Shown here piece after piece: positions 6,407 through 64,000 of a DNA stretch of 64,000 nt. The stretch is from Macrostomum lignano. Lineage: Eukaryota. The position numbers and the translations under genes are program-made. Each line of letters begins with the position of its first letter. Position 1 is the first letter of the stretch. The notes beneath the pieces are model-generated. The model ran no database searches. It was not told the DNA's origin and worked only from the letters and a program-made list of their open reading frames with translations. Location: assembly GCA_002269645.1 (NCBI GenBank), contig NIVC01000697.1:1-64000 (forward strand), written 5' to 3'.

Positions 6407-27660
<21,254 letters not shown>

Positions 27661-35709: not shown

Positions 35710-37133
35710 TTGACTTCATAAACAAATCGAATAGCGAGTGAGCACTGAGCATACGCAGTATGGCATTCAATACGGATAGCGAATGGCAGTTATTCACTGT
35801 GGCCAATCTAGTTGAGTAGAAATAATATTTTAATATTTTATAATAATACTGTATTTAAAGAAAATTCCCTAAAAATAAAAAGCATCATCTCGCTGGCAAG
35901 CTAAAAAGTCCGCTACTTGAAGAATACGCAGTATAACAAAGCGATTTTATAAAGCACAGACTTGATTTTTGAAAGTAGGCTAAATATTCTTTTTGTTTGT
36001 TTTTCAACAAAAAAGTGTCTTATTTCGTTTTCCTGTTTTGTTTTAGAAAAAAAACCAATCAGCTGACTGGCTTTACTCTATTGACTTCAAATTCAGTAAC
36101 TCTGATGAAATAGGTTCAGGATTCATTAAATGAAACAGAGTAGACCCGGTACCCGTAGGTGTAAGCAGTTTTAATTTAGCTAAACTTACACACTTTTTCC
36201 GTTCATAATCAATTGAATTTCTAGGATGATGAGTAAAAATTCTGTTTCTTTTGTTTTCTTTAAAAGAAAGATTTCTTTTAATCTTTTTACTTTTCGTTAG
36301 GCCTAATCTTCAGCTTGAATACCACCGCAGTATTTTAATTAAGCGTTTATTTAATGTCAAGATTGTAAGGCCAGTCAAGAGACTATGCGATTATTTTTTG
36401 GCCTAGTATAATCATAAATCGGCATGCAAATTGTATGTAAGATTTTCGAGAAACTCTTTGTGAAATTGACTTGAATTTTCTTATTTTTAAATAAACTTAT
36501 TGTTTCCATGGTCCTATGGTAGGCCTACTGGCCTAAAACAGTTCCTCTTTCGAAAGAGGAATTTCTCATTTTGAGTTGATCCTAGCCAAGAAGATTTGAA
36601 GGTGACACAGGACTTGCCAAAAAAAGTTATAAACTAACTAGCAAAAAGTTCATAACTAGAGTATAACCATGCATATTTGCCTTAGATTTATAAAACAAGA
36701 CCTAACTAAAAAAATAGACGAAATGCTTAATAGTTAGTTTAATGATTATTAATAGGCCTATATGTAATAAGTAATAAGTATAAATTCAATAGTTTATTTA
36801 ATTTATAGACAAGGATAGTTAGGGAATTATAGTTAATTATATTTCAAAGTATTAAAACTTAAAATAATTATAAGTTACTGTTTATCTAAACAATATCTAG
36901 TTAAGCTCAAAATAATAGTTTATAAATCACAGTTTTTGTAGCCTTTAAGCAAACAATTACTATATCATTAAATGATAGAACACTGATTCATTAAACACTA
37001 TGAAAGCTATCTTAAAAAATTATCTTAAAATCAATTTTATGGATTTTTTAAAGGTTATTAATATTTGCCTGCTTATAATGAAATGCTTTTCAATGCCCCC
37101 TACCGATTTTCAGTCCCCGCTAGCTGCATAGAA

Positions 37134-38527
37134 ATGACTTCGCCAGCCAGGCGTCGCCTTGTTCGCGATTTCAAGCGCCTCCAGGAGGACCCACCTGCTG
37201 GCGTATCTGGGGCCCCTAACGAGAGCAACATTCTGCATTGGAATTGCCTGATTTTCGGACCGCAGGACACGCCATTTGAGGATGGCACCTTCCAGCTGAC
37301 TATGGAGTTCAGCGACGAGTATCCCAATAAGCCGCCGCTTGTTCGCTTTGTATCGAAAATGTTTCATCCCAATGTCTACGCGGATGGCAGCATCTGTCTG
37401 GACATCCTGCAGGTTAGTATCTGGACATCCTTTACTCTTAACTCTGCCCAGTGTTCAGGCTGGGGTCTCAGCTCCACCCAGACAGCTCCGCTCCACCCAG
37501 ACAGCTCCACCGAGACAGCTCCACCCAGACAGCTCCGCTCCACCCAGACAGCTCCACCCAGACCTCAGCTCCACCCAGACCTCAGCTCCACCCAGACCTC
37601 AGCTACACCCAGACCTCAGCTACACCCAGACCTCAGCTACACCCAGACCTCAGCTCCAACCAGACCTCAGCTCCACCCAGTGATCCAGACCTCAGCTCCA
37701 CCCAGACCTCAGCTCCACCCAGACCTCAGCTCCACCCAGACCTCAGCTCCACCCAGACCTCAGCTCCACCCAGACCTCAGCTCCACCCAGACCTCAGCTC
37801 CACCCAGACCTCAGCTCCACCCAGACCTCAGCTCCACCCAGACCTCAGCTCCACCCAGACCTCAGCTCCACCCAGACAGCTCCACCCAGACCTCAGCTCC
37901 ACCCAGACCTCAGCTCCACCCAGACCTCAGCTCCACCCAGACAGCTCCACCCAGACCTCAGCTCCACCCAGACCTCAGCTCTACCCAGACCTCAGCTCCA
38001 CCCAGACCTCAGCTTCACCCAGACAGCTTCACCCAGACAGCTCCACCCAGACAGCTCCACCCAGACAGCTCCGCTCCACCCAGACAGCTCCACCCAGACC
38101 TCAGCTCCACCCAGACCTCAGCTCCACCCAGACAGCTCCACCCAGACCTCAGCTCCACCCAGACCTCAGATCCACCCAGACCTCAGCTCCACCCAGACCT
38201 CAGCTCCACCCAGACCTCAGCTCCACCCAGACCTCAGCTCCACCCAGACCTCAGCTCCACCCAGACCTCAGCTCCTCAAATGAGCCATCACACTGCGCCG
38301 ATCTGCAAATTACGTGGCATCCCTGAAAACTTGCGCAGGCCAAGTGGAGCCCCACCTATGACGTTTCCGCCGTGCTGACCTCCATCCAGTCCCTGCTGGA
38401 CGAGCCCAACCCAAACTCGCCAGCCAACAACGTGGCCGCCACTCTCTACCAGGAGAACAAGCGCGAATATGAGAAAAAGGTGCGCGCCATTGTTGAAGAG
38501 AGCTGGGAGATGGCCGAGTCCACTTGA
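37134..38527 (+). CDS. UBE2A: Ubiquitin-conjugating enzyme E2 A/B (Rad6 orthologue), 155 aa; join(37134-37412, 38339-38527)
   Basis: [38 protein letters not shown] | [43 protein letters not shown] motif and catalytic Cys present. GTTAGT/CAG intron, phase 0. Confidence 0.96.
37470..38275. repeat. Minisatellite, 18/15-bp units (CAGACCTCAGCTCCACCC)
   Basis: Fills the UBE2 intron. Confidence 0.94.
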
Positions 38528-43019: not shown

Positions 43020-44706
43020 CTGGCACCGAAGTATCTGGCACCGAAGAAGTGTCTTGGCACCGAAGTGTTTGGTACCGAAGAAGTGTCTTGGCACCGAAGA
43101 AGTGTCTGGCACCGAAGAAGTGTCTGGCACCGAAGAAGTGTCTGGCACCGAAGAAGTGTCTGGCACCGAAGAAGTGTCTGGCACCGAAGTGTCTTGGCAC
43201 CGAAGAAGTGTCTGGCACCGAAGTGTCTGGCACCGAAGAAGTGTCTGGCACCGAAGAAGTGTCTGGCACCGAAGTGTCTGGCACCGAAGAAGTGTCTGGC
43301 ACCGAAGTGTCTTGGCACCGAAGAAGTGTCTTGGCACCGAAGTGTCTTGGCACCGAAGGTGTCTGGCACCGAAGAAGTGTCTGGCACCGAAGTGTCTTGG
43401 CACCGAAGAAGTGTCTTGGCACCGAAGTGTCTGGCACCGAAGAAGTGTCTGGCACCGAAGAAGTGTCTGGCACCGAAGTGTCTGGCACCGAAGAAGTGTC
43501 TGGCACCGAAGTGTCTTGGCACCGAAGAAGTGTCTTGGCACCGAAGTGTCTTGGCACCGAAGAAGTGTCTGGCACCGAAGAAGTGTCTGGCACCGAAGTG
43601 TCTTGGCACCGAAGTGTCTTGGCACCGAAGTGTCTTGGCACCGAAGAAGTGTCTTGACACCGAAGAAGTGTCTGGCACCGGTGTCTGGCACCGAAGAAGT
43701 GTCTGGCACCGAAGAAGTGTCTTGTCACCGAAGAAGTGTCTTGTCACCGAAGAAGTGTCTGGCACCGAAGAAGTGTCTGGCACCGAAGTGTCTTGGCACC
43801 GAAGAAGTGTCTTGACACCGAAGAAGTGTCTGGCACCGAAGAAGTGTCTTGACACCGAAGAAGTGTCTGGCACCGAAGAAGTGTCTGGCACCGAAGAAGT
43901 GTCTGGCACCGAAGTGTCTGGCACTGAAGAAGTGTCTGGCACCGAAGAAGTGTCTTGTCACCGAAGAAGTGTCTGGCACCGAAGAAGTGTCTGGCACCGA
44001 AGTGTCTTGGCACCGAAGAAGTGTCTTGACACCGAAGAAGTGTCTGGCACCGAAGAAGTGTCTTGACACCGAAGAAGTGTCTGGCACCGAAGAAGTGTCT
44101 GGCACCGAAGAAGTGTCTGGCACCGAAGTGTCTGGCACCGAAGAAGTGTCTTGGCACCGAAGTGTCTTGGCACCGAAGTGTCTTGGCACCGAAGTGTCTT
44201 GGCACCGAAGTGTCTTGGCACCGAAGTGTCTTGGCACCGAAGTGTCTTGGCACCGAAGTGTCTTGGCACCGAAGTGTCTTGGCACCGAAGTGTCTTGGCA
44301 CCGAAGTGTCTTGGCACCGAAGTGTCTTGGCACCGAAGTGTCTTGGCACCGAAGTGTCTTGGCACCGAAGTGTCTTGGCACCGAAGTGTCTTGGCACCGA
44401 AGTGTCTTGGCACCGAAGTGTCTTGGCACCGAAGTGTCTTGGCACCGAAGTGTCTTGGCACCGAAGTGTCTTGGCACCGAAGTGTCTTGGCACCGAAGTG
44501 TCTTGGCACCGAAGTGTCTTGGCACCGAAGTGTCTTGGCACCGAAGTGTCTTGGCACCGAAGTGTCTTGGCACCGAAGTGTCTTGGCACCGAAGTGTCTT
44601 GGCACCGAAGTGTCTTGGCACCGAAGTGTCTTGGCACCGAAGTGTCTTGGCACCGAAGTGTCTTGGCACCGAAGTGTCTTGGCACCGAAGTGTCTTGGCA
44701 CCGAAG
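43020..44706. repeat. Minisatellite, 15-19-bp units (GGCACCGAAG[AAG]TGTCT[T]); homogeneous 16-bp block from ~44150
   Basis: Intergenic tandem array. Confidence 0.95.
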
Positions 44707-45494
44707 TAATGCATCTGTAGAAAAGAGAGGCTCAAAAACTCTTCTGTAAAACATTTGTGTGCATTTTTCAAGCAATTTTTCTCGTTTGAAAACGCAGCTG
44801 CTCAATAATTTGCGCTCTAGAGGAGGAAAGCGATTAAAATAACGCCACAATTCTCTCCAGATAATTGCCCCTGGAGGAAATAGCGACTCTGTGTATCTGG
44901 TCCAACAGCTGATGCCATCGCTGCTAGCTTTGAGTTGGCGCCATGCAGGATATTCTGCCTATTTCTCATTTTTTTCGCTTTTCCATAGAAAAAAAAACAA
45001 ATTTTCGTCCGCATCCATGATGACGTCATTAGACAAGCGCGGAGTCGCAACTTAAGCCTGCCAGCCCTGCACAGGGTGCAAATACGGCCCGGGTCGCTAA
45101 TTCGCGCTCGAGTTTTCGCGGTCGCTAGGGCCTCGCGCGTGCATTGTTTCGCACTGTGATGCGTACAATAACCACCAACTCGCTGAGCCTTTCTCACTTG
45201 TGAGCAGTCAGGCTATTTTTATTGGAGTCCATCGATAATAGCCCAGCCCCCAGGGGTCGCAGCGGGAGTGCGAAGGCTCGTACCGGCGTTGGGGGGTTGC
45301 GGTTTCGCGCATTTTGCATCATTTTTTCTCAACTTGCAAACAGCTGCTGAATGAAAGCAAATTTTTTTTAGTTGGCTTTCGTTGCATTAAAGCATCAATC
45401 TTATGACTGTTCTCATCTACATTGCGGATGCTGATCCAGCATCCCTTCCTCATCACATTCTTATCCAATGAGCTAAGGTAAAATTAATCATTGT

Positions 45495-46543: not shown

Positions 46544-46838
46544 ATGGAAACTTTGAAATCCGCGGCTGCCGCGGCCGCAGCAGCCGCCGCCGGTGGCCCA
46601 TATTCCCCGGAGCAGCCTGACGGTCCGGACTTCTCGCCACAGAGCGGCGGAGCCGGCGGCTACCCCGGCGGCCTGTCTGTCGCGGCGGCCTACTCCTCCG
46701 CACTCGGCCAGGGATTTCCGGCCGCCGCCAGGTCCGCCGCTCCCTACATCTCGGCTGCTCACGGCTTCGGTGGCGACCAGGCCGCTGCCGCCGCTTACTT
46801 CGCTGCCCACCACGGCTTCGGCGCTGCCAGGCCTGATG
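46544..46838 (+). CDS. Dlx: Dlx-A exon 1
   Basis: Ala/Gly-rich ORF; donor GTGAGT, phase 1. Confidence 0.85.
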
Positions 46839-49800
46839 GTGAGTCAAGGCCTGATACAGCTGCTGCATCCCGCCTTCATCTGTCTGAGCTGCTGCATCCC
46901 GCCTTCATCTGTCTGAGCTGCTGCATCCCGCCTTCATCTGTCTGAGCTGCTGCATCCCGCCTTCATCTGTCTGAGCTGCTGCATCCCGCCTTCATCTGTC
47001 TGAGCTGCTGCATCCCGCCTTCATCTGTCTGAGCTGCTGCATCCCGCCTTTATCTGTCTGAGCTGCTGCATCCCGCCCTCATTTGCCCTGTCTACCCCTC
47101 ATCTCCCCCTGCCTGTCCCTCATTTCCCCCTGTTTGTCCCTCATCTCCCCCTGCCTGTCCCTCATCTCCCCCTGCCTGTCCCTCATCTCCCCCTGCCTGT
47201 CCCTCATCTCCCCCTGTTTGTCCCTCATCTCCCCCTGCCTGTCCCTCATCTCCCCCTGCCTGTCCCTCATCTCCCCCTGCCTGTCCCTCATCTCCCCCTG
47301 CCTGTCCCTCATCTCCCCCTGTCTGTCCCTCATCTCCCCCTGCCTGTCCCTCATCTCCCCCTGCCTGTCCCTCATCTCCCCCTGCCTGTCCCTCATCCCC
47401 CCTGCCTGTCCCTCATCTCCCACTGCCTGTCCCTCATCTCCCACTGCCTGTCCCTCATCTCCCACTGCCTGTCCCTCATCTCCCACTGCCTGTCCCTCAT
47501 CTCCCCCTGCCTGTCCCTCATCCCCCCTGCCTGTCCCTCATCTCCCACTGCCTGTCCCTCATCTCCCCCTGCCTGTCCCTCATCTCCCACTGCCTGTCCC
47601 TCATCTCCCACTGCCTGTCCTTCATCTCCCACTGCCTGTCTCTCTACTCTCCACCAATTGCTTTACTTTTCCTTTTAGTCATCCTCTCCTCCCCTTTCTC
47701 AATCACAGCCTGGCTATTTTTACTGACTTTATCAAACAAATTCCTCTGGCTTCATTCTCTGGCTCCATTCTCACCTTTCCTACCTTTCCAACTCCTCAGC
47801 CAACTCAACCAAAGTCCGACTGTGGGAGCAAAGAGTTAGATCCCCACTGGCCTCAGAGCCCCGCCCCTGCCCGCCTTCTCAATCGGCGACCAACCCCACC
47901 AAACGAGATTGCTATCTGTAAGTCCGGCCGAGGCCCCTCGCCGTCTCAAAGATCTCAAATAAAAATCTATCTATTGTAAGAAGTCGGACCAGATAATATA
48001 GACAGACAGGCAGGCAGGACAGTCAAGATTAAAGCGAGTAGAAATTCAGAGTGATTTCATCGCATCGTGTCGTCTCTTTGGAACAGCCATCTCCCTTCGG
48101 GGGGAATCCCATTGTTTTGCCATCGCTGTCTACGACCACCTGTTGCGTGGCCGAATTTCCCAACTGACTTATAAATCAGATTACTCCAACTTTCAGGCCA
48201 CTCCGCCACAGTTCCCACTTGTTCCTGTTTCCCTCATGGTCAGGATAGTCATGTTTGTTTGTTTTAATTTTTAACGAAAATAACAACAACTCCAACTACT
48301 GCCCGCAGACTTGCCGCGCGACTCAGAGGGTGTCAGAGTTGGCGCCGGCCTCGGCAAAGGCAAGAAGATGCGCAAGCCGCGCACCATCTACTCCAGCCTC
48401 CAGCTGCAGCAGCTTAACAGGCGGTTCCAGCGCACCCAGTACCTGTCACTGCCTGAGCGGGCTGAGCTGGCAGCCAGCCTGGGGCTCACGCAGACTCAGG
48501 TGAGTGAATATTCAGTTGTGATTTGATGGGGAAATGGACTGAGATAGGGATAGACAGGGATAGGCAAGAATAGACATGGGATAGACATGGGATAGACAGG
48601 GATAGACAGGGATAGACAGGGATAGACAGGGATAGACAGGGATAGACAGGGATAGACAGGGATAGACAGGGATAGACAGGGATAGACAGGGATAGACAGG
48701 GATAGACAGGGATAGACAGGGATAGACAGGGATAGACAGGGATAGACAGGGATAGACAGGGATAGACAGGGATAGACAGGGATAGACAGGGATAGACAGG
48801 GATAGACAGGGATAGACAGGGATAGACAGGGATAGAAAGGGATAGACAGGGATAGACAGGGATAGACAGGGATAGAAAGGGATAGACACAACGTTAGCAA
48901 TGCTAGAGTAGCCTTTAAAAAGCGACATCCCCGCGAAGAGTGAAGAAGCAACAAAAAGGAAAAGAAAACTTCTCCCCTACCGATGCCAAAAACGCCCCGA
49001 GGACTCAAATAGAATTGTTTTGGATTGCGTGACGGCCCGCGAATGTCCTCTCAGCGTTCTGCGGGGCGGGCTCTTCCTCGCCACTCGTCAGCGCGCATGG
49101 TTGGTGGCGTGCGCGCCGTGACGCAACTGTTGCATCCTTGAAGTTGGGAGGAATGCATGGAGAGTTCTAGCCTATTCTCACTCTCTCCTGAGGGCGCCAT
49201 TGTGCCACTCTATTCTGCTTTATATCTCTAAAATGCTTTGAGCTATTGTCTTTATAGAGGCCTTTGACTTATCAATAATTTTTCCCTCTTAACTCAATAT
49301 TTCAGGTGAAGATTTGGTTTCAGAACAAGCGGTCCAAGTATAAGAAACTGCTGAAGCAGGGCCAGGACCCGCAGAACCTGGTTGACAGCATGAACGCCGA
49401 CGATGAGGAATTTTCTGATGACGTGAGTTCTTTGGGATTTTGATGAAGCAGAGTTTTAGTGGGTAGCAGAGCAGTCCTGAAGGATCGGGTGAGGGGTAGC
49501 GGAGCAGTCCTGAAGGATCGGGTGAGGGGTAGCGGAGCAGTCCTGAAGGATCGGGTGAGGGGTAGCGGAGCAGTCCTGAAGGATCGGGTGAGGGGTAGCG
49601 GAGCAGTCCTGGAGGATCGGGTGAGGGGTAGCGGAGCAGTCCTGAAGGATCGGGTGAGGGGTAACGGAGCAGTCCTGAAGGATCGGGTGAGGGGTAACGG
49701 AGCAGTCCTGGAGGATCGGGTGAGGGGTAGCGGATTGAATGGGGGGCAAGTGAATCGTCAGATTTTGGGATAGAAAAGAATTTCAGAATCCTTAATGAGA

Positions 49801-50468
49801 CAGCAGTCTTTTAGTTGAAAAAAAACGGATAAGAGGATTCAAACAAAGTTAAAAATTTTAATCTAGATAAAAAAACCGATTCTTTCCAGGAAATGATGAT
49901 GAAGAACGAAGCGAACAGTCCGATAAAGTCTGAAGCGATCATCCCGATGCACCAGCTTCCCCAGCATCCCCAGCTTCATCAGCATTTTCAACAGCGCCAG
50001 CAACAGCTTGACTCGGCTAACGAAGCCTGCGAAGCTGACTCCTTGGATTCGAACTCCCGACCTCCGCCTCCGCCGACAACTCACGGATCCTCCGAGGCTG
50101 AAGCCGACGCCGCTGGAAGCGGCGACTCGGGAGTTCCGGAAATTCAGAAGCCGCAGCCGCTGCCTCCGCCGCCACCGGCCCTGCTTGGTGAAGTTGGTGC
50201 ACCTGGAGGAGGCGCCAGTGGCCCCCTGATATCGCAGTTGCTCCCGCATCAGCACGCGCTCCAGCATCAGCACGCACTGCAGCAACATCATCAGCAGCAG
50301 CATTCTCAGCTGCATTCGTATAGCGGAGACTGGGAGCAATCGCATCATCTCCATGGCAACGCCTACCAGCTGCCGATGTCGCCTCATCCAGGCTACAGTT
50401 ACCACGGAAACCCGTACTGGTACAGCGGCGGCTATCAGCAGCAGGTGTACAACCATCAGGAGTGCTGA
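46544..50468 (+). CDS. Dlx: Distal-less/Dlx homeobox protein, copy A, 393 aa; join(46544-46838, 48309-48499, 49306-49422, 49890-50468)
   Basis: Homeodomain [44 protein letters not shown]|[14 protein letters not shown], with the Dlx-type intron between HD positions 44 and 45. All introns GT-AG, phases 1,0,0. Confidence 0.93.
46858..47640. repeat. Two adjacent minisatellites in Dlx-A intron 1: 29-bp GAGCTGCTGCATCCCGCCTTCATCTGTCT (46858-47077), then 21-bp CCCTCATCTCCCCCTGCCTGT (47079-47640)
   Basis: The same two units occur inverted at 58268-58830. Confidence 0.93.
48309..48499 (+). CDS. Dlx: Dlx-A exon 2 (homeodomain 1-44)
   Basis: CCCGCAG acceptor; GTGAGT donor. Confidence 0.95.
48545..48888. 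repeat. 10-bp tandem array (GATAGACAGG)
   Basis: Dlx-A intron 2. Confidence 0.95.
49306..49422 (+). CDS. Dlx: Dlx-A exon 3 (helix 3)
   Basis: TTTCAG acceptor; [19 protein letters not shown]; GTGAGT donor. Confidence 0.93.
49457..49733. repeat. Minisatellite, 33-bp unit (GGGGTAGCGGAGCAGTCCTGAAGGATCGGGTGA)
   Basis: Dlx-A intron 3. Confidence 0.93.
49890..50468 (+). CDS. Dlx: Dlx-A exon 4 (Pro/Gln/His-rich C-terminus)
   Basis: TCTTTCCAG acceptor in frame with ORF 49893-50468. Confidence 0.85.
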   Translation, partial: EMMMKNEANSPIKSEAIIPMHQLPQHPQLHQHFQQRQQQLDSANEACEADSLDSNSRPPPPPTTHGSSEAEADAAGSGDSGVPEIQKPQPLPPPPPALLGEVGAPGGGASGPLISQLLPHQHALQHQHALQQHHQQQHSQLHSYSGDWEQSHHLHGNAYQLPMSPHPGYSYHGNPYWYSGGYQQQVYNHQEC

Positions 50469-53056
50469 TCTGGACGCGCCTGAGACCGACATTCCCATTC
50501 GAGTATCTCTCAAGCCTACCGGCTTAACAACTATAAATTAGTCAATAGATTAAACTTAAGCTCGGTACAAAAATATACTTTTGTTACTAGGGCCGGTCGG
50601 TATAAATGCAGTTTGGTAGTTGCACAGCGTCCAATATATCCGTGCCCCCACTGCTCACTTGAATTGCTGCTTTTTCTCCCATTGTTTCGCTTTTGTCGGC
50701 CGTTTCAATAATATACATTTTTTCTCTGCTTTTTTCTTACACAAAATTTTCCTAATATAACTGTTGCTTGTTTGTCCGCGCTTCTGGTTTGTGCGTTGGT
50801 TTCCGCTAATATTCATTATGCTTTTAATACGCGCTCCGAAGCTCACCTTATAGCCCCCACCACCCCTACAGCACCTGTAGCAATATCTTTTGCATACTAT
50901 CTGCAATAACAGAATTTGAAATATAAAAATATGAAGAATTTATATGCAGGAATTGTGCAATCTAATATATGTTTATACAAGCTCTGTGTAGCTCAGTGCT
51001 AAAAAAACCCATATGTCTGTTCCGAACATTGAATTTAATTTTGAAAGATTTTCGCAACGTTGTTTGAGAATTGGAAATGTACTTCAAATGCCGCAGATGA
51101 TTGATAACAAAGACAACAGATACCGACTCAAATGGCCATTGCAGCGACACAAGAACAAGATGATATGTTACAAGATGAATGCCAGCTAAGACAAAGGCCA
51201 TAAATTTCAGAGGCATGTTGGTCTGGCGGTTGGCAGTCTGAATAGAAAATCCGAGTTCACGCTGTGCCCCCCCCCCCAGCCGAGCACAGGCCAGAGGCAG
51301 TTGTGTCGAGAAGCGCTGAAATTTGAGACGCCGGGCACAAACGCCGCTCCGTCATGAGCAGGAGGCCGCGGCTTGGTGCCACCCGCCACAGAACTTGCCA
51401 TGAGTTCCAAACGAATTCGAGACACAGAGAGACAGTGGAGGGTAGGGGAGGGCGGGCGGACCTCCCCCTGCTCCCCCCTGTAATTAGCGGGTACCTTCGC
51501 CCAAGCAAAGGGGGGGGGTTGCCTCCTGCCAACCCTCCCCCCTTCCCTCGGGATGGGCTCGGGGCTCAAGGTAAAAAAAAATCGCCGGGGACTCATCGCT
51601 TATGGTTTGAAAGCAACTTTTGGCCAAGCAGAACCGGCCTGCCCTGTCCTGCTCAGTCACCGAGGACCAGAATGCACAGACGGGCGCTCTGGCTGGTGTG
51701 CGGGCCTTGGTGTGTGGTGTGCGATGGTCGAGCCTTTGAATTGTGGAGGTGGGCGGATCCACCCTGGGGAAGAGGGAATAAGACTCTGGAGGCAACGAAT
51801 CCTTCCTACGGGCCTTGGAGATTAGGCCCCGCCTAGCCCTGTCCTCAGTCTCTTTCTCCAAAGCTAATTCTCCATCATCATTTTGTTGCTATGCTAAATG
51901 AACGAAAATCGCTATTATTGCATTGTGTTGTGCCTGACTGCTAGGCCAGTGCCAGGACAAGCTTTGAAAGTTTGTTTTAAACAGGTTAGTTTAATGCAAA
52001 AGCGTGTGATCGAGTCAGATTAAATCGAATAATATGGCTTGTTGGTGAAAGAGACACGCGCTGGTCAGGCCATGGAGGAGAATGGATCGCTGATTCGATG
52101 CACTCGTTGGGGGGGGGGGCTCGCTCATGCAACTCTGGGGATATGGGGGGGGCACACGACCCCTCAGGTGAGTCCTCGAGTTGAGTAGGCTGGATTCAAG
52201 CCTCAGGTGCGCATGGGGCCGTCCCCCCATCAGCCCTCAATCAGTAACGCGCAGCCTTAGCCAGAGCGGAGCGGCAGCAAAAGCAGCATAACAGCAGGGT
52301 TGCTTTCAACATTTGAGCGCCTTTGTTCCCTCGCCTCTCGCACAAAGGCTTGCAGCAACAAAAAGCAGACAGAAGAGCGACAGTTTTTGCTCAAAAAGCC
52401 TATTTTTTGCCTTTCTCTCCCTCTTCGAGCTGCTCAAACAATCGCTCTGAGGACTTGCTGATCGGGGAGCAGCTTAAGAGGGCCAATTAGCGATGAAAGT
52501 CAAAGGCCGCTCGGGAGGGGGGGGGGGCTAAGCAGGTAAAACAAGCAGGCAAATATTTCACCGTTTCTCTTGGGAAATGCAACAGTGGAATTCCTTTACC
52601 GATTCTACATAACCGGTGTACTCAATAATAAAATTGCGCTAATATTATGAAATTTTCATCACTGAAAACTTGAAAAATGAAAAACACACTGGCGCCTGAG
52701 TGACTCAGAGAGACAGGAGCTGCCCCGAAGCTGAAAGTGGAGGAAGAGTGGAAGGCGGAAGCAGAGAGCAGGATCTATCAGCCTCCCATTCGAACGAATT
52801 CACTTCCGGTGCGTGCGGAAGCGGCTTCAGCTCGAAATTTCGAATTTTGTTTGTCCAGTTACAAAAAAAACCCAGCCTCCGCTGCTTCATCCTCAACTGA
52901 GCAGCGAAAAAAATGGTTAATTTCTGCCTTCCGTGCGGAGGCGGCTGCCGCTGGAGTTTCGGGGGTTTTCCTTTATATATTTTTTATATATTTTAACTGC
53001 CCTGTGCTTAACTCGTTTTTATAAGCTATCAGATAGTATAAATTGATCGCCACAAA

Positions 53057-53487
53057 CCCTAATCCTAGCCCTAATCCTGATCCTGATCCTGATCCTAATC
53101 CTAATCCCAGTCCTAATCCTAATCTAGATCCTAATCCTAATCCTAACCTTATAATCTTAATCTTAATCCTAATCCTAATTCTAATCCTAATCCTAATCCT
53201 ATTCCTAGTCCTAGTCCTAATCCTAATCCTATTCCTAATCTTGATCCTAATCTAATCCCTAATCCTAATCTTATCCCTAATCCTAATCCTATCCCTAATC
53301 CTACTTTAACCGTGATCCTAATCATAATCCTAATCCTAACCCTGATCCTAATCCTAAGCCTAATGCTAATCCTAATCATAATCCCAATCCTAACCTTGAT
53401 CCTAATCCTAATCCTAATGCTAATCCTAATCATAATCCTAATCCTAACCCTGATCCTAACCATAACCTCGGTCCTAACCTTAATTCT
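53057..53487. repeat. Degenerate (CCTAAT)n hexamer array, telomere-repeat-like
   Basis: Mostly TCCTAA with scattered CCCTAA; lies in the Dlx intergenic spacer. Confidence 0.88.
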
Positions 53488-53810
53488 AAGAAAAACACAA
53501 AACCCTAACCGACAATGCTTTTCTGCTCTCTTTTTTCTTCCGTTTGGCCAATCAATCAGAGATCAAACGCCTCATTGAAATTTTAAAACCTCTTAATTGC
53601 TTACTCTTAGTAGAATAATTCGACTAAAAGGATTAGAAATAAATTAGTCAATCGAACTCATTTCAAATGCAAACAATGCATGAATTAGCGCGAAGAAATT
53701 CCTGGCAATCCAGCCACAGTCGATCATCGTTCATTATAGACATCGTTTCAAAAGCTCTGAGGCGTTACAACAAGTCAAGCCAACGTAGCTAGAAAACTAG
53801 ATTTGCTAAA

Positions 53811-54044
53811 CTAGTTGGTTTGAGACGGGTACTCAAACCAGTCATAGAAGGCTTGGGAACCGTTGCTCGGCTGCTGGCTCTTCTGGTGCCACGGTCGTGC
53901 ATCGAAACCCTTTGACTGCATTGTGCCGTAGGCTGAAGCTTCTTGGTGGCACCATCGGTTGAGCTGATGGCTGCTGGCGGCTGATGGAGCGGAGGCTGAT
54001 GCTGATGCTGCTCCCAGATTTTCCGCCAGTTGCTGATGTACTGG
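53811..54044 (-). CDS. Dlx: Dlx-B probable exon 4 ([23 protein letters not shown])
   Basis: 77-codon phase-0 frame after CATTTAG. An upstream CAG acceptor (exon starting at 54071) would give PPNTEVNI*. Confidence 0.6.
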   Translation of the reverse strand, partial: PVHQQLAENLGAASASASAPSAASSHQLNRWCHQEASAYGTMQSKGFDARPWHQKSQQPSNGSQAFYDWFEYPSQTN

Positions 54045-57000
54045 CTAAATGTTGACTTCCGTGTTTGGAGGCTGCGGGCGGACAGCGGGTTGAATGAAAA
54101 TTCCATGTGCTACTTTCACTTTGCCATGCATCAATAGTGTGTGATGTGCGATTTTCACTTTGCCATGCATCAATAGTGTGTGATGTGCGATTTTCACTTT
54201 GCCATGTATCAATAGTGTGTGATGTGCGATTTTCACTTTGCCATGTATCAGTAGTGTGTGATGTGCGATTTTCACTTTGCCATTTATCAATAGTGTGTGA
54301 TGTGCGATTTTCACTTTGCCATGCATCAGTAATGTGTGATGTGCGATTTTCACTTTGCCATGTATCAATAGTGTGTGATGTGCGATTTTCACTTTGCCAT
54401 GTATCAGTAGTGTGTGATGTGCGATTTTCACTTTGCCATTTATCAATAGTGTGTGATGTGCGATTTTCACTTTGCCATGCATCAGTAATGTGTGATGTGC
54501 GATTTTCACTTTGCCATGTATCAATAGTGTGTGATGTGCGATTTTCACTTTGCCATGTATCAGTAGTGTGTGATGTGCGATTTTCACTTTGCCATTTATC
54601 AATAGTGTGTGATGTGCGATTTTCACTTTGCCATGCATCAATAGTGTGTGATGTGCGATTTTCACTTTGCCATGCATCAATAGTGTGTGATGTGCGATTT
54701 TCACTTTGCCATGTATCAATAGTGTGTGATGTGCGATTTTCACTTTGCCATGTATCAGTAGTGTGTGATGTGCGATTTTCACTTTGCCATGCATCAATAG
54801 TGTGTGATGTGCGATTTTCACTTTGCCATGCATCAATAGTGTGTGATGTGCGATTTTCACTTTGCCATGTATCAATAGTGTGTGATGTGCGATTTTCACT
54901 TTGCCATTTATCAATAGTGTGTGATGTGCGATTTTCACTTTGCCATGTATCAGTAGTGTGTGATGTGCGATTTTCACTTTGCCATGTATCAGTAGTGTGT
55001 GATATGCGATTTTCACTTTGCCATGTATCAATAGTGTGTGATGTGCGATTTTCACTTTGCCATTTATCAATAGTGTGCGATGTGCTACTTTCACTTTGCC
55101 ATTTATCAATAGTGTGTGATGTGCGATTTTCACTTTGCCATTTATCAATAGTGTGCGATGTGCTACTTTCACTTTGCCATTTATCAATAGTGTGCGATGT
55201 GCTACTTTCACTTTGCCATTTATCAATAGTGTGCGATGTGCTACTTTCACTTTGCCATGCATCAGTAATGTGTGATGTGCGATTTTCACTTTGCCATGTA
55301 TCAATAGTGTGTGATGTGCGATCTGTCGTGTAAAGTCCAGCTCAGAATCCTTCTCAAGCCTCACCTGCTCGAACTCTGCGTCGCCTTCACCACCCAGACT
55401 CATCGAGTTGATCAGCAGATGAGGATCGTTGCCCAGCTTCACCAGCTTCTTGAATTTCGATCTTCGGTTTTGGAACCAAATTTTCACCTGATGGTTGCAG
55501 CGACTGCCATTCTTGCCATTATCTGCCATTATTCAGCTACATACTGAACAATCTGCCATTATTCAGCTACATAATGAACAATCTGCCATTATTCAGCTAC
55601 ATACTGAACAATCTGCCATTATTCAGCTACATACTGAACAATCTGCCATTATTCAACTCAGCTACATACTGAACAATCTGCCATTATTCAGCTACATACT
55701 GAACAATCTGCCATTATTCAACTCAGCTACATACTGAACAATCTGCCATTATTCAGCTACATACTGAACAATCTGCCATTATTCAACTCAGCTACATACT
55801 GAACAATCTGCCATTATTCAACTCAGCTACATACTGAACAATCTGCCATTATTCAACTCAGCTACATACTGAACAATCTGCCATTATTCACATCAGCTAC
55901 ACACTGAACAATCTGCCATTATTCAACTCAGCTACATACTGAACAATCTGCTATTATTCAACTCAGCTACACACTGAATAATCTGCCATTATTCAACTCA
56001 GCTACACACTGAACAATCTGCCATTATTCACATCAGCTACACACTGAACAATCTGCCATTATTCAACTCAGCTACATACTGAACAATCTGCCATTATTCA
56101 ACTCAGATACATACTGAACAATCTGCTATTATTCAACTCAGCTACACACTGAACAATCTGCCATTATTCAACTCAGCTACATACTGAACAATCTGCCATT
56201 ATTCAACTCAGCTACATACTGAACAATCTGCCATTATTCAACTCAGATACATACTGAACAATCTGCCATTATTCAACTCAGCTACACACTGAACAATCTG
56301 CCATTATTCAACTCAGCTACACACTGAACAATCTGCCATTATTCAACTCAGCTACATACTGAACAATCTGCCATTATTCAACTCAGCTACATACTGAACA
56401 ATCTGCCATTATTCAACTCAGATACATACTGAACAATCTGCCATTATTCAACTCAGCTACACACTGAACAATCTGCCATTATTCAACTCAGCTACACACT
56501 GAACAATCTGCCATTATTCAACTCAGCTACACACTGAACAATCTGCCATTATTCAGCTCAGCTACATACTGAACAATCTGCCATTATTCAGCTCAGCTAC
56601 ATACTGAACAATCTGCCATTATTCAACTCAGCTACATACTGAACAATCTGCCATTATTCAGCTCAGCTACATACTGAACAATCTGCCATTATTCAGCTCA
56701 GCTACATACTGAACAATCTGCCATTATTCAGCTCAGCTACATACTGAACAATCTGCCATTATTCAGCTCAGCTACATACTGAACAATCTGCTATTATTCG
56801 ATAGAAGTTTGCAACTTCCCGAGCCTGTTGCTTCTCCAGTTCGATTGCAAATTTCAAGGTTCGAACAATTTGGACAAGCAACTGATCAAACCTCCAGAAG
56901 CTGTCGCAGGGCAGAGGGTTTCGAAGCCGTTGAATAGAAAAAAGGTGGCCAGGAACTTCAAACAAAAACTGACTCACAAAAAGTCACCGCCTGCAGGCAG

Positions 57001-59105
57001 CCCCATCTGGCGCCATTCAGTTGCAGATAATTGCAGGCCTCACTGCTCCTGCCGCCACCTGAGCTGCTCCCACCTGGCTGGAGACTTTGGGCGGCGAAGG
57101 TCTCTCTCTCTCTCTCTCTCTACCTTTCTCTCTCTCTCTCTCTTTGAGAAGAAAAGTGGATCGCTGCACGAGTTTGATTTTCCTCCTGTCGAGCCTGACA
57201 GTTTGTCAGTTTTTCAAGCAGCGGCATTCGGGAAAAATGAAAGCTAAGAGAGGTCATAACAGCTGAGAGAGGTGATAACAACTAAGAGAGGTCATACACA
57301 GCTGAGAGAAGTCATACACAGCTGAAAGAGGTGATAACAACTAAGAGAGGTCATACACAGCTGAGAGAAGTCATACACAGCTGAGAGAGGTGATAACAAC
57401 TAAGAGAGGTCATACACAGCTGAGAGAAGTCATACACAGCTGAGAGAGGTGATAACAACTAAGAGAGGTCATACACAGCTGAGAGAAGTCATACACAGCT
57501 GAGAGAGGTTATAACAACTAAGAGAGGTCATACACAGCTGAGAGAAGTCATACACAGCTGAGAGAGGTTATAACAACTAAGAGAGGTCATACACAGCTGA
57601 GAGAGGTCATACACAGCAAAGAGAGGTCATACACAGCTGAGAGAGGTCATATACAGCTAAGAGAGGTCATAAAAAGCTAAGAGAGGTCATACACAGCTGA
57701 GAGAGGTCATATACAGCTAAGAGAGGTCGTACACAGCAAAGAGAGGTCATACACAGCTAAGAGAGGTGATAACAACTAAGAGAGGTCATACACAGCTAAG
57801 AGAGGTCATAAACAGCTAAGAGTGGTCATACACAGCTAAGAGAGGTCATTAACAGCTAAGAGCAGTCATAAACAGCTAAGAGCGGTCTGCTCAAATGCTA
57901 CTCACCTGAGTCTGCGTGAGCCCCAGGCTGGCTGCCAGCTCAGCCCGCTCAGGCAATGACAGGTTCTGGGTGCGCTGGAACCGCCTGTTGAGCTGCTGCA
58001 GCTGGAGGCTGGAGTAGATGGTGCGCGGCTTGCGCAATCGGCGCAGCTTCTTGTTGCCAGACGGCAGGAGCACGAGGCAGCCTGCGGCTGTGCGGCAATG
58101 GCAGGAATGTTCAGAAGCCGTATTTTGCTGAGATTTTCGGGTCAATCCAGTTTAAATGGCCATACGAGATATAGAGACTTGGTGCAGAGACAGTGCGTGA
58201 GACTGTATGAGATGGAATGGGAAGATGAGGAAGTGAAAGGGAGAACTGGGAAGCGGGTAGAAAGGGTGAGGGACAGACAGGGGGAGATGAGGGACAGACA
58301 GGGGGAGATGAGGGACAGACAGAAGAGATGAGGGACAGACAGGGGGAGATGAGGGACAGACAGGGGGAGATGAGGGACAGACAGGGGGAGATGAGGGACA
58401 GACAGGGGGAGATGAGGGACAGACAGGGGAGATGAAGGCGGGATGCAGCAGCTCAGACAGATGAAGGCGAGATGCAGCAGCTCAGACAGATGAAGGCGGG
58501 ATGCAGCAGCTCAGACAGATGAAGGCGGGATGCAGCAGCTCAGACAGATGAAGGCGAGATGCAGCAGCTCAGACAGATGAAGGCGAGATGCAGCAGCTCA
58601 GACAGATGAAGGCGGGATGCAGCAGCTCAGACAGATGAAGGCGGGATGCAGCAGCTCAGACAGATGAAGGCGGGATGCAGCAGCTCAGACAGATGAAGGC
58701 GAGATGCAGCAGCTCAGACAGATGAAGGCGAGATGCAGCAGCTCAGACAGATGAAGGCGGGATGCAGCAGCTCAGACAGATGAAGGCGGGATGCAGCAGC
58801 TCAGACAGATGAAGGCGGGATGCAGCAGCTGTATCAGGCCTTGACTCACCATCAGGCCTGGCAGCGCCGAAGCCGTGGTGGGCAGCGAAGTAAGCGGCGG
58901 CAGCGGCCTGGTCACCACCGAAGCCGTGAGCAGCCGAGATGTAGGGAGCGGCGGACCTGGCGGCGGCCGGAAATCCCTGGCCGAGTGCTGAGGAGTAGGC
59001 CGCCGCGACAGACAGGCCGCCGGGGTAGCCGCCGGCACCGCCGCTCTGTGGCGAGAAGTCCGGACCGTCAGGCTGCTCCGGGGCGAACCTGGCGGCTGTC
59101 TGCAT
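53811..59105 (-). CDS. Dlx: Distal-less/Dlx homeobox protein, copy B, ~262 aa; join(58850-59105, 57906-58081, 55365-55487, 53811-54044); last-exon acceptor uncertain (54044 vs 54071)
   Basis: Homeodomain [44 protein letters not shown]|[14 protein letters not shown]. Same four-exon layout and phases (1,0,0) as copy A. Confidence 0.85.
54107..55322. repeat. Minisatellite, 39-bp unit (TTCACTTTGCCATGYATCARTAGTGTGTGATGTGCGATT)
   Basis: Dlx-B intron 3. Confidence 0.95.
55365..55487 (-). CDS. Dlx: Dlx-B exon 3 (helix 3)
   Basis: [29 protein letters not shown]; GTGAGG donor. Confidence 0.92.
55520..56797. repeat. Minisatellite, 35/30-bp units (ACTGAACAATCTGCCATTATTCAACTCAGCTACAT)
   Basis: Dlx-B intron 2, acceptor side. 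Confidence 0.95.
57245..57885. repeat. Minisatellite, 19/20-bp units (AGCTGAGAGAGGTCATACAC)
   Basis: Dlx-B intron 2, donor side. Confidence 0.92.
57906..58081 (-). CDS. Dlx: Dlx-B exon 2 (homeodomain 1-44, with Y25N)
   Basis: CCGCAG acceptor (a second in-frame CAG lies 6 nt upstream); GTGAGT donor. Confidence 0.9.
58268..58830. repeat. Two adjacent minisatellites in Dlx-B intron 1 (21-bp at 58268-58432; 29-bp at 58433-58830), reverse complements of the Dlx-A intron 1 units
   Basis: Units GAGGGACAGACAGGGGGAGAT and AGACAGATGAAGGCGGGATGCAGCAGCTC. Confidence 0.93.
58850..59105 (-). CDS. Dlx: Dlx-B exon 1 ([17 protein letters not shown]..)
   Basis: 231/234 nt identical to Dlx-A exon 1 over 58850-59083; donor GTGAGT. 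The start codon is inferred. Confidence 0.8.
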
Positions 59106-59384
59106 CCCTGATTGTTGAAGATAACAGCGCAGTTGTTTCCGAGTGATCAATTGGCACCCGATAGGAGCTGTCAGTGCCAATTTACACCATTCGAATGCAG
59201 GCCAAAAGCCATGGGGGAGAAATGCAGCTCTCACTGGCAGCTGGATGCTATTGGCTCAGAAAGCTTCCCAAGTTTTTTACGAGAGAACGAAGACAACGCT
59301 TGGGAGAATCCTTGAATACCTCCGCATCTTGCAATAACTATTTTCATCTCAATTTATGACATGCCGGTCTCATACTCTGCTGTA

Positions 59385-59822
59385 CATCTTAGCCATCTCC
59401 AAGCTGCACTCAGCCACCCCCAAGCTGCACTCAGCCACCTCCAAGCTGCACTCAGCCACCCCCAAGCTGCACTCAGCCACCTCCAAGCTACACTCAGCAA
59501 CCTCCAAGCTACACTCAGCCACCTCCAAGCTACACTCAGCCACCTCCAAGCTACACTCAGCCACCTCCAAGCTACACTCAGCCACCTCCAAGCTACACTC
59601 AGCCACCTCCAAGCTACACTGAGCCACCTCCAAGCTACACTCAGCAACCTCCAAGCTACACTCAGCCACCTCCAAGCTACACTCAGCCACCTCCAAGCTA
59701 CACTCAGCCACCTCCAAGCTACACTGAGCCACCTCCAAGCTACACTCAGCCACCTCCAAGCTACACTCAGCCACCTCCAAGCTACACTCAGCCACCTCCC
59801 AGCTACACTCAGCCACCTTCAA
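59385..59822. repeat. Minisatellite, 21-bp unit (CACTCAGCCACCTCCAAGCTA)
   Basis: Upstream of Dlx-B. Confidence 0.93.
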
Positions 59823-60494
59823 GCTGAAGCGAATCCAACCAAGCCAATTTTCATGTTACTTGGACTCAAATGCTAAAAGCAAATAATTTTCCCTGAAAGG
59901 GGTCAAAGCAGCGAGCTGCGAGGCTTGGCATTAGATGTCATGCGGGCTTTCTGGCTGGACGAGTGGCGGGGGGGTTGCAGTGTAGGCTCCGTTCCCTCGC
60001 CCGCCTCGCTCTATTAATTACCGACTTCCTCTTCCGCGCTTGGCGGGGAGAGGGCCACCTCCTGTCCAACCCCAACCCCTCGACTTCCCTTTTGACTTTT
60101 CTCCACTGTCTTTTATTTCTGCTTCTCCTCTTGTGCATTCGGACAAGCCGCCTTCGACAAGCTACAAAGACCAAGGTTGGGTAATTATCTGATGCCAGCA
60201 GCCCTAGAAACAGCTGCAATTACCCCCCCCCCTTATCCTCCCGTTCCCCGGCCCCCAGATTTCTGTTCTGCTGCTGCCGCCCCCGGCAAATTCATAAGCT
60301 GCGCCTCATTTCCGATTCCAGCAGCAGCTATCACAAGTTTTTTATTTTAATTTAAACAACATCTTTTATGGTGGAGTTGCAATTAGCTTGTCTGCTGAAA
60401 ATTTTCACTTAGTCATTAAATTATAATTAACTCTTTTTGCCAGACAGCGAGACAGAAATTACTGCACTCAGGAGAAACGTGAAAGTGAAAAGAA

Positions 60495-61956: not shown

Positions 61957-62204
61957 TCAGGTAACCCCGCCATAGAGACTAGAAGCCTTCAATTTGCTGA
62001 ACTCTTCAATCGCTGCGGCCGCCTCTGCAACAAGCTGGTCGCGCAGACTGGACTGTTCGTCTTTCAAGGCGGCTGAGTCAGTCTGCTGCTCCTGGCGTTG
62101 TGAGCCGCCGCGTGACAGCACCCAGGCGTGGCAAAGGACGTCTATGGCAGTGAGGCGGGCCGCCTTGTCCACCACTAGGAGACGGTTGATGAGATCCTTG
62201 GCGG
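61957..62204 (-). CDS. Last coding exon of a CAMK-group Ser/Thr kinase, DCLK3-like (gene continues beyond the window)
   Basis: AKDLINRLLVVDKAARLTAIDVLCHAWV is kinase subdomain XI, similar to doublecortin-like kinases. Acceptor CACCGCAG, phase 1; stop at 61957. Confidence 0.75.

Positions 62205-62240: not shown

Positions 62241-64000
<1,760 letters not shown>

What the first reader, a model, noticed from the sequence alone, without database searches (positions are those of the whole stretch)
46605..59083. Patchwork identity between the Dlx paralogs indicates two gene-conversion tracts
Seen: tract 1 (46605-46838 vs 58850-59083) is 231/234 identical, all three differences are synonymous, and it continues into intron 1. 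Tract 2 (48371-48505 vs 57900-58034; HD residues 2-44 plus the donor GTGAGT) is 132/135 identical. The N-termini, the 5' part of exon 2 ([21 protein letters not shown] vs [16 protein letters not shown]), the rest of intron 1, introns 2-3, exon 3 and exon 4 are unrelated or strongly diverged. Inference: recurrent non-allelic conversion between inverted paralogs (fold-back pairing) homogenises the N-terminal domain and HD helices 1-2, while the recognition helix and C-terminus diverge. This would distort phylogenies and cause RNAi or probe cross-reactivity.
Basis: partly seen in the sequence, partly recalled or inferred. Interest (0 to 1): 0.75.

Follow-up and report, generated by a model that had tools for sequence, protein, structure and literature searches.

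The report
Gene conversion between flatworm Dlx paralogs
Two old, tail-to-tail copies of the Distal-less (Dlx) homeobox gene in a Macrostomum lignano-like flatworm share two islands of about 98-99% identical DNA. These are best explained by copy-and-paste repair (gene conversion), a pattern already described for the Dlx pair of an annelid, so this is a real but fairly ordinary example of a known process.

Summary
Gene A (+, 46544-50468) and gene B (-, 59105-53811) are intact four-exon Dlx genes transcribed convergently. Tract 1 is much longer than described: it runs about 1 kb (A 46605-47652, B 59083-58264), through a shared 29-mer array and a shared 21-mer array in intron 1.

Synonymous divergence is 0.05-0.06 in the tracts but saturated in exon 3 (pS 0.84). 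All other sequence is unalignable. A third M. lignano paralog (C) groups with A in exon 3 and the pre-homeodomain segment, while exon 1 groups A with B. That is the incongruence expected from conversion.

Other M. lignano B-type gene models show the same mosaic junctions, which argues against an artefact of this assembly.

"Recurrent" conversion is not shown. The two tracts have indistinguishable divergence, similar to the divergence between M. lignano subgenomes, and at least four of the six differences are private to this B copy.

Capitella teleta CtDlxa/CtDlxb is a direct published precedent. Verdict: new member of a known kind, modest interest.

The parts
46544..50468 (+). Dlx gene A (canonical flatworm-type Distal-less). 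Exons 46544-46838, 48309-48499, 49306-49422, 49890-50468; 393 aa, intact.
   Evidence: ORF and splice-site reading. All donors are GTGAGT. The exon 1-4 junctions are reproduced by database model P0001 (100% identity). Pfam Homeodomain E = 5e-21. Best hits are all Dlx/Distal-less.
53811..59105 (-). Dlx gene B (divergent paralog). Exons 59105-58850, 58081-57906, 55487-55365 and a tentative exon 4 at 54044-53811; 262 aa, no internal stop; homeodomain Tyr25 is Asn in this copy.
   Evidence: The exon 1-2 and 2-3 junctions match M. lignano models P0002/P0004/P0007/P0137. Pfam Homeodomain E = 6e-21. The exon 4 acceptor is uncertain (54044 or 54032). An upstream acceptor implied by the error-prone P0002 model would give an early stop in this copy.
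46605..47652 (+). Tract 1, A arm: exon 1 from codon 21 (46605-46838), the donor plus 19 nt of unique intron, a 29-mer array (46858-47082) and a 21-mer array (47096-47644).
   Evidence: (inverted repeat I1: 481 nt ungapped, 98%).
58264..59083 (-). Tract 1, B arm: exon 1 from codon 9, the donor plus 19 nt of identical intron, a 29-mer array (58830-58430, 14 units, six of them with a CCC>CTC variant) and a 21-mer array (58435-58267, 8 units, GTC variant).
48369..48505 (+). Tract 2, A arm: the last two bases of the codon before the homeodomain, homeodomain residues 2-44, and the GTGAGT donor.
   Evidence: 137 nt, 97.8%. It ends 37 nt before an A-specific 10-mer array.
57900..58036 (-). Tract 2, B arm.
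   Evidence: It ends 13 nt before a B-specific 20-mer array.
47653..48368 (+). Unconverted segment of A between the tracts: the 3' part of intron 1 and the first 60 nt of exon 2 (…[21 protein letters not shown]).
   Evidence: No similarity to B 58263-58037 (z = 0.2 against shuffles). The GKGKKM motif is shared with paralog C and other flatworm Dlx proteins.
58037..58263 (-). Unconverted segment of B between the tracts: the 3' part of intron 1 and the first 45 nt of exon 2 ([16 protein letters not shown]).
   Evidence: The same B-specific peptide, with one substitution, is present in all other B-type models.
49306..49422 (+). Exon 3 of A (homeodomain residues 45-60 plus a tail). This is the old-paralogy control: homologous to B 55487-55365 but only 65.6% identical over the first 90 nt.
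   Evidence: pS 0.84, dN 0.26, third positions 13/30 identical; z = 12.
50469..53810 (.). 3.3-kb spacer between the two 3' ends. It contains a degenerate telomere-like (CCTAAT)n array at 53058-53459.

Best explanation
A and B are old, lineage-specific Dlx duplicates arranged tail-to-tail in a Macrostomum lignano-like genome. A is the canonical flatworm-type copy and B is the divergent one.

Two collinear, in-frame patches have been overwritten by interlocus (non-allelic) gene conversion. The first covers exon 1 from codon 21 of A (codon 9 of B) through about 0.8 kb of intron-1 minisatellites. The second covers homeodomain residues 2-44.

Inferred mechanism: a break in one copy is repaired by copying from the inverted paralog 9-11 kb away on the same chromatid or the sister, without crossover. 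The copied stretch ends where homology ends. Both 3' tract ends lie 3-37 nt from minisatellite array edges, so heterologous arrays probably act as barriers.

The likely direction is A to B (inferred). The last exchange is about as old as the split between the M. lignano subgenomes. Since then the arrays have changed copy number and this B copy has gained private mutations, including Tyr25Asn in the homeodomain.

Shown: the mosaic itself, its significance, the incongruence between regions, and its presence in other B copies. Inferred: the repair mechanism, the direction, and the number of events.
For: - Identity counts and sharp boundaries.
- dS of 0.050 and 0.062 in the tracts against saturated pS of 0.84 in exon 3 of the same gene pair. 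Third-codon-position identity is 74/77 and 42/43 in the tracts against 13/30 in exon 3.
- The identity includes non-coding intron and two minisatellite arrays in the same order, so protein-level selection cannot explain it.
- Everything else is unalignable except exon 3.
- Per-region identities are incongruent. Exon 1: A-B 100%, A-C 49%. Pre-homeodomain: A-B 19%, A-C 35%. Exon 3: A-B 54%, A-C 74%.
- Both patches sit at exactly homologous, in-frame positions of the two genes, as expected for homology-directed copying.
- Four M. lignano gene models (P0002, P0004, P0007, P0137), which differ from this window by substitutions and so come from other copies, carry the same junctions: TAARFT|PEQPDG, ARPD|[16 protein letters not shown]|RKPRT, and TQTQ|[12 protein letters not shown].
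- Both 3' tract ends lie within 3-37 nt of array edges.
- No Rfam family or tRNA lies in the shared region.
- Published precedent with the same architecture: Capitella teleta CtDlxa/b (PMC3199776).
Against: - No nucleotide sequence of the homeologous loci or of sister species could be obtained. The classic test, in which tracts group by locus or species and flanks group by paralog, was done only at protein level and within one genome.
- Immediately outside the tracts there is no measurable nucleotide homology. It is therefore unclear what homology supported the first exchange.
- GC3 is only mildly higher in the tracts (0.74-0.88) than in exons 3-4 (0.58-0.74), so there is no clear signature of long-term biased conversion.
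- The two tracts are equally diverged, and at least four of the six differences are private to this B copy. Ongoing or recurrent conversion is not demonstrated.
Confidence: 0.82

Rival explanations
1. One-off chimeric origin by a mechanism that does not depend on homology. A partial inverted copy of the 5' part of A was pasted into an older paralog B, for example by replication template switching, and has simply been inherited since. No recombinational dialogue between the copies is involved.
For: Boundaries are razor sharp, with random-level identity immediately outside them. The two tracts have the same divergence. The same mosaic is present in every B-type model available. At least four of the six differences are later private mutations.
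Against: There are two separate patches with an unconverted 227/716-nt segment between them. Each patch lies at exactly the homologous, in-frame position in the recipient gene, which a homology-independent insertion would not be expected to hit twice. Within the tracts, A is no further from the B copies than the B copies are from each other, so the event cannot be much older than the subgenome split.
Confidence: 0.1
2. Assembly or polishing artefact. Sequence from A, or from a homeolog of A, was wrongly placed or propagated into B in a highly repetitive neopolyploid assembly.
For: According to PMC10733133, the M. lignano reference has three subgenomes about 2% apart, 36% of its length in chimeric scaffolds, and 93% multi-mapping read pairs. 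The tract divergence (1.6%) is the same size as homeolog divergence.
Against: The junctions lie inside exons and are reproduced in four gene models that differ from this window by substitutions, so they come from other copies and probably from another assembly. The arms are separated by 9-11 kb of unique sequence, are not a perfect palindrome, and have different array copy numbers and array-specific variants. Polishing cannot turn unalignable sequence into 98-99% identity.
Confidence: 0.04
3. A recent whole-gene inverted duplication, with purifying selection keeping the tracts similar while the rest of the gene diverged very fast.
For: The tracts encode the conserved half of the homeodomain and an N-terminal domain.
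Against: Silent sites, an intron and minisatellites are also identical. Exon 3 encodes the most conserved helix yet is saturated at silent sites. Introns and flanks are unalignable.
Confidence: 0.02

Closest known systems
Capitella teleta CtDlxa/CtDlxb (McDougall et al. 2011, PMC3199776)
   Same: A lineage-specific protostome Dlx duplication. The two genes are closely linked, inverted and tail-to-tail, and encode otherwise divergent proteins. Near-perfect nucleotide identity, including silent sites, is confined to the 5' (pre-intron) half of the homeobox. It was interpreted as mosaic gene conversion.
   Different: In Capitella the identity continues into the 5' part of the intron inside the homeobox. 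Here it stops at the donor (+6 nt). This locus has a second and much larger tract covering exon 1 and about 0.8 kb of intron-1 minisatellites. The pair also sits in a neopolyploid genome with several copies of the locus.
engrailed/invected in hexapods (homeobox gene conversion; cited in PMC3199776 as its ref. 49)
   Same: Convergently arranged homeobox paralogs with conversion limited to part of the gene.
   Different: A different homeobox class and a different lineage. I did not examine those sequences; this comparison rests on the citation.
Vertebrate Dlx bigene clusters (Dlx1/2, 3/4, 5/6)
   Same: Tail-to-tail arrangement with a short spacer. The homeodomain intron lies at the same position, after residue 44.
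   Different: Per PMC3199776, no conversion is reported for the mammalian pairs and their homeoboxes are diverged. Nothing here suggests orthology. A and C resemble other flatworm Dlx proteins, and B has no relative outside M. lignano in the searches.
Arm-to-arm conversion in inverted repeats (Drosophila Hsp70 pairs, human Y palindromes; as cited in PMC3199776)
   Same: Intrachromosomal non-reciprocal exchange between closely spaced inverted copies.
   Different: Those arms are homogenised over their whole length. Here only two short domains are homogenised, and the remainder has escaped completely.

Membership tests
Dlx / Distal-less homeobox genes | A homeodomain of the Dlx type, with Dlx proteins as best matches | tested here: met
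   Pfam Homeodomain E = 5e-21 (A) and 6e-21 (B). Apart from the M. lignano models (some named after the fused kinase) and unnamed entries, the named top hits of both proteins are Dlx/Distal-less.
Dlx / Distal-less homeobox genes | An intron splitting the homeobox after homeodomain residue 44 (TQTQ|VKIWFQN) | tested here: met
   Both genes have CAG|GTGAGT after Gln44 and an acceptor before VKIWFQN. That this position is typical of Dlx genes rests on my own knowledge and on PMC3199776.
Interlocus (non-allelic) gene conversion | Tracts of anomalously high identity within paralogs that are otherwise strongly diverged, extending to silent and non-coding sites | tested here: met
   dS 0.05-0.06 against saturated exon 3. 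Intron and arrays are included. Fisher p = 1.7e-18.
Interlocus (non-allelic) gene conversion | Phylogenetic incongruence between the tracts and the rest of the gene | tested here: met
   With the third M. lignano paralog C, exon 1 groups A with B (100% vs 49%), while the pre-homeodomain segment and exon 3 group A with C (35% vs 19%; 74% vs 54%). This is protein level only, within one genome.
Interlocus (non-allelic) gene conversion | Tracts group by locus or species when orthologous pairs from other genomes or subgenomes are added | not testable with these tools
   No DNA of the homeologous loci or of sister species was available. Partial nucleotide states recovered from frameshifted gene models give a star-like A1/B1/B2 relationship.
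Interlocus (non-allelic) gene conversion | Non-reciprocity (one copy is the donor and stays unchanged) | not testable with these tools
   The A-to-B direction is only inferred, because A is collinear with C and with other flatworm Dlx proteins along its whole length.
Concerted evolution (recurrent conversion) | Repeated events: tracts of different ages, locus-specific shared variants, or a GC-biased signature | tested here: inconclusive
   Tract ages are indistinguishable (p = 0.67). GC3 is only mildly raised. One site (48449) is shared between this B copy and P0137 but not A. At least four of six sites are private to this B copy.
Chordate-type Dlx bigene cluster (orthology) | Tail-to-tail arrangement | tested here: met
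   A is on the + strand and B on the - strand, with 3' ends 3.3 kb apart.
Chordate-type Dlx bigene cluster (orthology) | The two members are orthologous to the two chordate Dlx clades | not tested
   No phylogeny was built. B has no relatives outside M. lignano, which suggests a lineage-specific duplication.

The most novel reading that the evidence does not exclude
Independently arisen tail-to-tail Dlx pairs (annelid Capitella, flatworm Macrostomum) both keep the 5' half of the homeobox identical by conversion while the recognition helix and C-terminus diverge. This could reflect a selected or structurally predisposed 'shared module' architecture rather than coincidence.

A corollary specific to this locus: the inverted repeat of about 1 kb in exon 1 and intron 1 could mediate inversion of the 11-kb segment between the arms. 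That would swap the two promoters (and the first 8-20 codons) between the two gene bodies without otherwise changing the proteins.
Probability: 0.1. Interest if true: 0.6.

Novelty: new member of a known kind. Interest (0 to 1): 0.3.

Why it matters
- It would be a second documented Dlx pair with mosaic conversion of the homeobox 5' half. I found no flatworm example in the searches run here. That turns a single annelid curiosity into a possibly recurring pattern.
- Exon 1 or homeobox 5'-half sequences will mis-place B next to A in trees, and any gene tree built from them will under-estimate the age of the duplication.
- In situ probes, dsRNA and guide RNAs against exons 1-2 of either gene will hit both. 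They share seven exact runs of 24-74 nt, 356 nt in total.
- The locus shows how minisatellite arrays, which make up 37% of this window, may delimit conversion tracts.
- It also cautions that in the three-subgenome M. lignano genome, 1-2% paralog divergence cannot be read as "recent" without the homeologous loci.

Tried and rejected
- **DNA of the other M. lignano copies.** The look-up of encoding contigs on P0002, P0001 and P0003 found nothing on record. An exact 41-nt tract-2 pattern in metagenome contigs gave 0 hits. Nucleotide-level trees were therefore impossible.
- **B orthologs outside M. lignano.** A second protein search with B returned only M. lignano models plus generic Dlx proteins. 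The Logan-derived hits I inspected are not Macrostomum.
- **Work-around.** I read nucleotide states of other B copies from frameshifted stretches of the error-prone gene models. This was informative for five of the six sites, but it depends on those models.
- **Residual homology outside the tracts.** None was found except in exon 3, plus a weak low-complexity signal in exon 4. A possible short gapped similarity just upstream of 46605 (M[E/Q]T..AA..) is not significant.
- **GC-biased conversion signature.** Weak.
- **Structured RNA or tRNA as a reason for intron conservation.** None found.
- **TE or cassette explanation for tract 1.** The 29-mer and 21-mer arrays occur nowhere else in the window.
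- **Recent duplication plus selection.** Rejected by the silent-site contrast.
- **ENA contig L001.** Its two tandem Dlx homeobox exons proved to be an unrelated organism and a different (direct) arrangement.
Full report
**Observation**

46605-46838 against the reverse complement of 58850-59083 is 231/234 identical. 48371-48505 against 57900-58034 is 132/135 identical.

An unbiased self-comparison (blastn; repeat finder) shows these are the only similarities between the two loci, apart from a weak 72-nt match in exon 3 (49302-49373 vs 55491-55420, 73.6%).

It runs from 46605 to 47652 in A and from 59083 to 58264 in B, and has four parts:
- Exon 1 from codon 21 of A (codon 9 of B).
- The donor plus 19 identical intron bases.
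- A 29-mer minisatellite with the same unit in both genes (8 units in A, 14 in B).
- A 21-mer minisatellite (about 26 units in A, 8 in B), in which each array has fixed its own unit variant..CTGCCTGT.. in A and ..CTGTCTGT.. in B.

Tract 2 is 48369-48505 against 58036-57900. All four boundaries go from random-level identity to about 99% within a base or two.

**Gene models and organism**

Gene A (+) has exons 46544-46838, 48309-48499, 49306-49422 and 49890-50468. It encodes an intact 393-aa protein. Database protein P0001 matches it at 100% and reproduces all three splice junctions.

Gene B (-) has exons 59105-58850, 58081-57906, 55487-55365 and a tentative exon 4 at 54044-53811. It encodes 262 aa with no internal stop.

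Both proteins have a Pfam homeodomain, and their best named matches outside M. lignano are Dlx/Distal-less proteins. The genes are convergent, with 3' ends 3.3 kb apart.

The nearest named relatives are Macrostomum lignano proteins, so the window is very probably from that flatworm. Its genome is a recent polyploid with three subgenomes (S, L1, L2). These differ by about 1.1% in coding sequence and 2.2-2.4% overall (PMC10733133). Minisatellites with periods of 6-59 nt make up 37% of the window.

**Is the mosaic more than chance or selection?**

| Region | Synonymous divergence | Third-codon positions identical |
|---|---|---|
| Tract 1 (exon 1) | dS 0.050 (3 synonymous, 0 non-synonymous) | 74/77 |
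| Tract 2 (homeodomain 2-44) | dS 0.062 (2 synonymous, 1 non-synonymous) | 42/43 |
| Exon 3, first 30 codons | pS 0.84 (saturated), dN 0.26 | 13/30 |

(All.) Exon 3 encodes the most conserved helix of the homeodomain, yet it is the region that has diverged at silent sites. Fisher's exact test of tracts against exon 3 gives p = 1.7e-18.

Local alignment against shuffled controls finds no similarity in the following regions (z between -1.9 and 2.4):
- The 716/227-nt segment between the tracts.
- The 5' part of exon 2.
- Introns 2 and 3.
- The upstream region and the 3' flank.

Only exon 3 (z = 12) is clearly similar. Exon 4 gives a weak signal (z = 4.1) that looks like low-complexity sequence.

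The identity covers silent sites, an intron and two minisatellites. No Rfam family or tRNA lies there. Selection on protein or RNA therefore cannot explain it, and neither can a recent whole-gene duplication.

**Independent copies**

Four M. lignano gene models (P0002, P0004, P0007, P0137) are of the B type. They carry the B-specific N-terminus (MQTAARFT), the B-specific pre-homeodomain peptide ([16 protein letters not shown]) and, in P0002, the B-type exon 3. They are fused by the gene predictor to the same upstream kinase, whose last exon lies at 62202-61960 (-) in the window.

All four carry the A-like exon 1 and homeobox 5' half, with the same junctions. They differ from the window's B by substitutions that they share with each other:
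- ARFT in the models against ARFA in the window.
- SAALYIS against SAAPYIS.
- LVPLP against LVLLP.
- QQLS against QQLN.
- TQYL against TQNL.

They therefore represent other copies of the locus. This argues strongly against an artefact of this assembly and shows the mosaic is shared by the B copies.

These models contain frameshifted stretches, so their translations reveal nucleotide states at five of the six A/B differences (plus reading):
- At 46651, 46699, 46774 and 48440, the other B copies have the A state.
- At 48449, P0137 has the B state.
- At 48415, no model is informative.

At least four of the six differences are thus private mutations of this B copy. One of them is Tyr25Asn at a DNA-backbone-contacting residue of the homeodomain (the role of that residue is from my own knowledge). 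Within the tracts, A is no further from the B copies than the B copies are from each other.

**Incongruence with a third paralog**

P0003 has a UniParc identifier in the same accession block as the M. lignano entries, which is why I treat it as an M. lignano protein. It is a third Dlx type (C), about 60% identical to A.

| Region | A-B identity | A-C identity |
|---|---|---|
| Exon 1 tract | 100% | 49% |
| Pre-homeodomain segment | 19% | 35% |
| Exon 3 | 54% | 74% |

 A and C also share the ...KGKKM and ...[11 protein letters not shown] motifs with a monogenean Dlx protein (P0084). A is therefore the canonical copy and B the divergent one. This favours A as the donor, but only by inference.

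**Mechanism**

The best explanation is interlocus gene conversion between old inverted paralogs. Both patches replace exactly homologous, in-frame positions, which points to homology-directed copying rather than random insertion.

Both 3' tract ends lie 3-37 nt from array edges. Tract 1 ends where the shared 21-mer array ends. Tract 2 ends 37 nt before an A-specific 10-mer array and 13 nt before a B-specific 20-mer array. Heterologous arrays plausibly block extension of the copied stretch (inference).

**What is not shown**

Recurrence is not demonstrated, for four reasons:
- The two tracts are equally diverged (p = 0.67), so one discontinuous event would do.
- Overall divergence (6/369 = 1.6%) matches inter-subgenome divergence.
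- Most differences are private to one copy.
- GC3 is only mildly raised in the tracts.

The last exchange therefore dates to roughly the time the subgenomes split. Whether exchange continues needs the homeologous loci, which I could not obtain.

**Comparison with what is known**

McDougall et al. 2011 (PMC3199776) describe the same thing in the annelid Capitella teleta:
- They are 100% identical at nucleotide level in the pre-intron half of the homeobox and the start of the intron.
- The authors interpreted this as mosaic gene conversion and called it the only known Dlx example at that time.

The flatworm locus is therefore a second, independent member of a known kind. It differs in three ways:
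- It has a larger second tract covering exon 1 and the intron-1 minisatellites.
- Conversion stops at the homeobox donor.
- The genome is polyploid.

**Verdict**

Conversion is the best explanation. Tract 1's extent needs correcting, and "recurrent" is not shown. This is a new member of a known kind, of modest interest. The practical consequence is real: exon 1-2 probes, dsRNA and gene trees will confound the two genes (seven shared exact runs of 24-74 nt).

Noticed in passing
window 53058-53459: A degenerate hexamer array (CCTAAT)n, about 67 copies at 78% matches. It is one base away from the reverse complement (CCCTAA) of the canonical TTAGGG telomere repeat and contains a few exact CCCTAA units. 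It lies in the 3.3-kb spacer between the 3' ends of the two convergent Dlx genes.
   Followed up: partly
window 48440 / 57965 (gene B homeodomain residue 25): This B copy has Asn in place of the conserved homeodomain Tyr25 (TAC>AAC). All other M. lignano B-type models keep Tyr. Together with three private silent changes, this suggests relaxed constraint on this one homeologous copy.
   Followed up: partly
window 61960-62202 (-) and 59383-59825: The last exon of a protein-kinase gene lies upstream of Dlx-B. It matches the kinase-annotated M. lignano models P0002 and P0007 at 95%, although Pfam does not hit the short fragment itself. Public M. lignano gene models fuse this kinase to Dlx-B by translating the 21-mer minisatellite at 59383-59825 as (VAECSLE)n, which is probably a gene-prediction artefact.
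   Followed up: partly
whole window (e.g. 6959-8111, 17074-18978, 43021-44707, 54105-56799, 62243-64000): 37% of the 64 kb is minisatellite arrays (31 merged arrays, periods 6-59 nt). Many of them create long spurious ORFs in several frames. Every intron of both Dlx genes holds at least one array.
   Followed up: partly
window 24686-25330 (-), 13955-14479 (-), 37065-37400 (+): Neighbouring genes: dynamin (Dynamin_N/Dynamin_M E = 4e-42; GED domain E = 1e-6) and a ubiquitin-conjugating E2 enzyme (UQ_con E = 2e-32). The E2 ORF runs straight on into a minisatellite.
   Followed up: partly
L001 1193-1342 and 1730-1879 (ENA metagenome contig ERZ28668944 NODE_13077): An unidentified animal has two tandem, same-strand copies of the Dlx homeobox 5' exon, 537 nt apart. 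Each has its own acceptor and its own GTAGGA donor. They are 126/150 nt identical, with a near-identical central stretch of about 70 nt. This could be a mutually exclusive exon pair or another partly homogenised Dlx duplication.
   Followed up: partly
window 542-689 and 2510-2657: A 148-nt inverted repeat (88% complementary) with arms 1.8 kb apart, possibly the terminal repeats of a transposable element.
   Followed up: no
P0003 (UniParc UPI0007A135DF), not in the window: M. lignano appears to have a third Dlx type (C), about 60% identical to A and with an A-like exon 3. The species would then hold at least three Dlx paralog types, each possibly in several subgenome copies. I found no description of this in the literature search.
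   Followed up: partly
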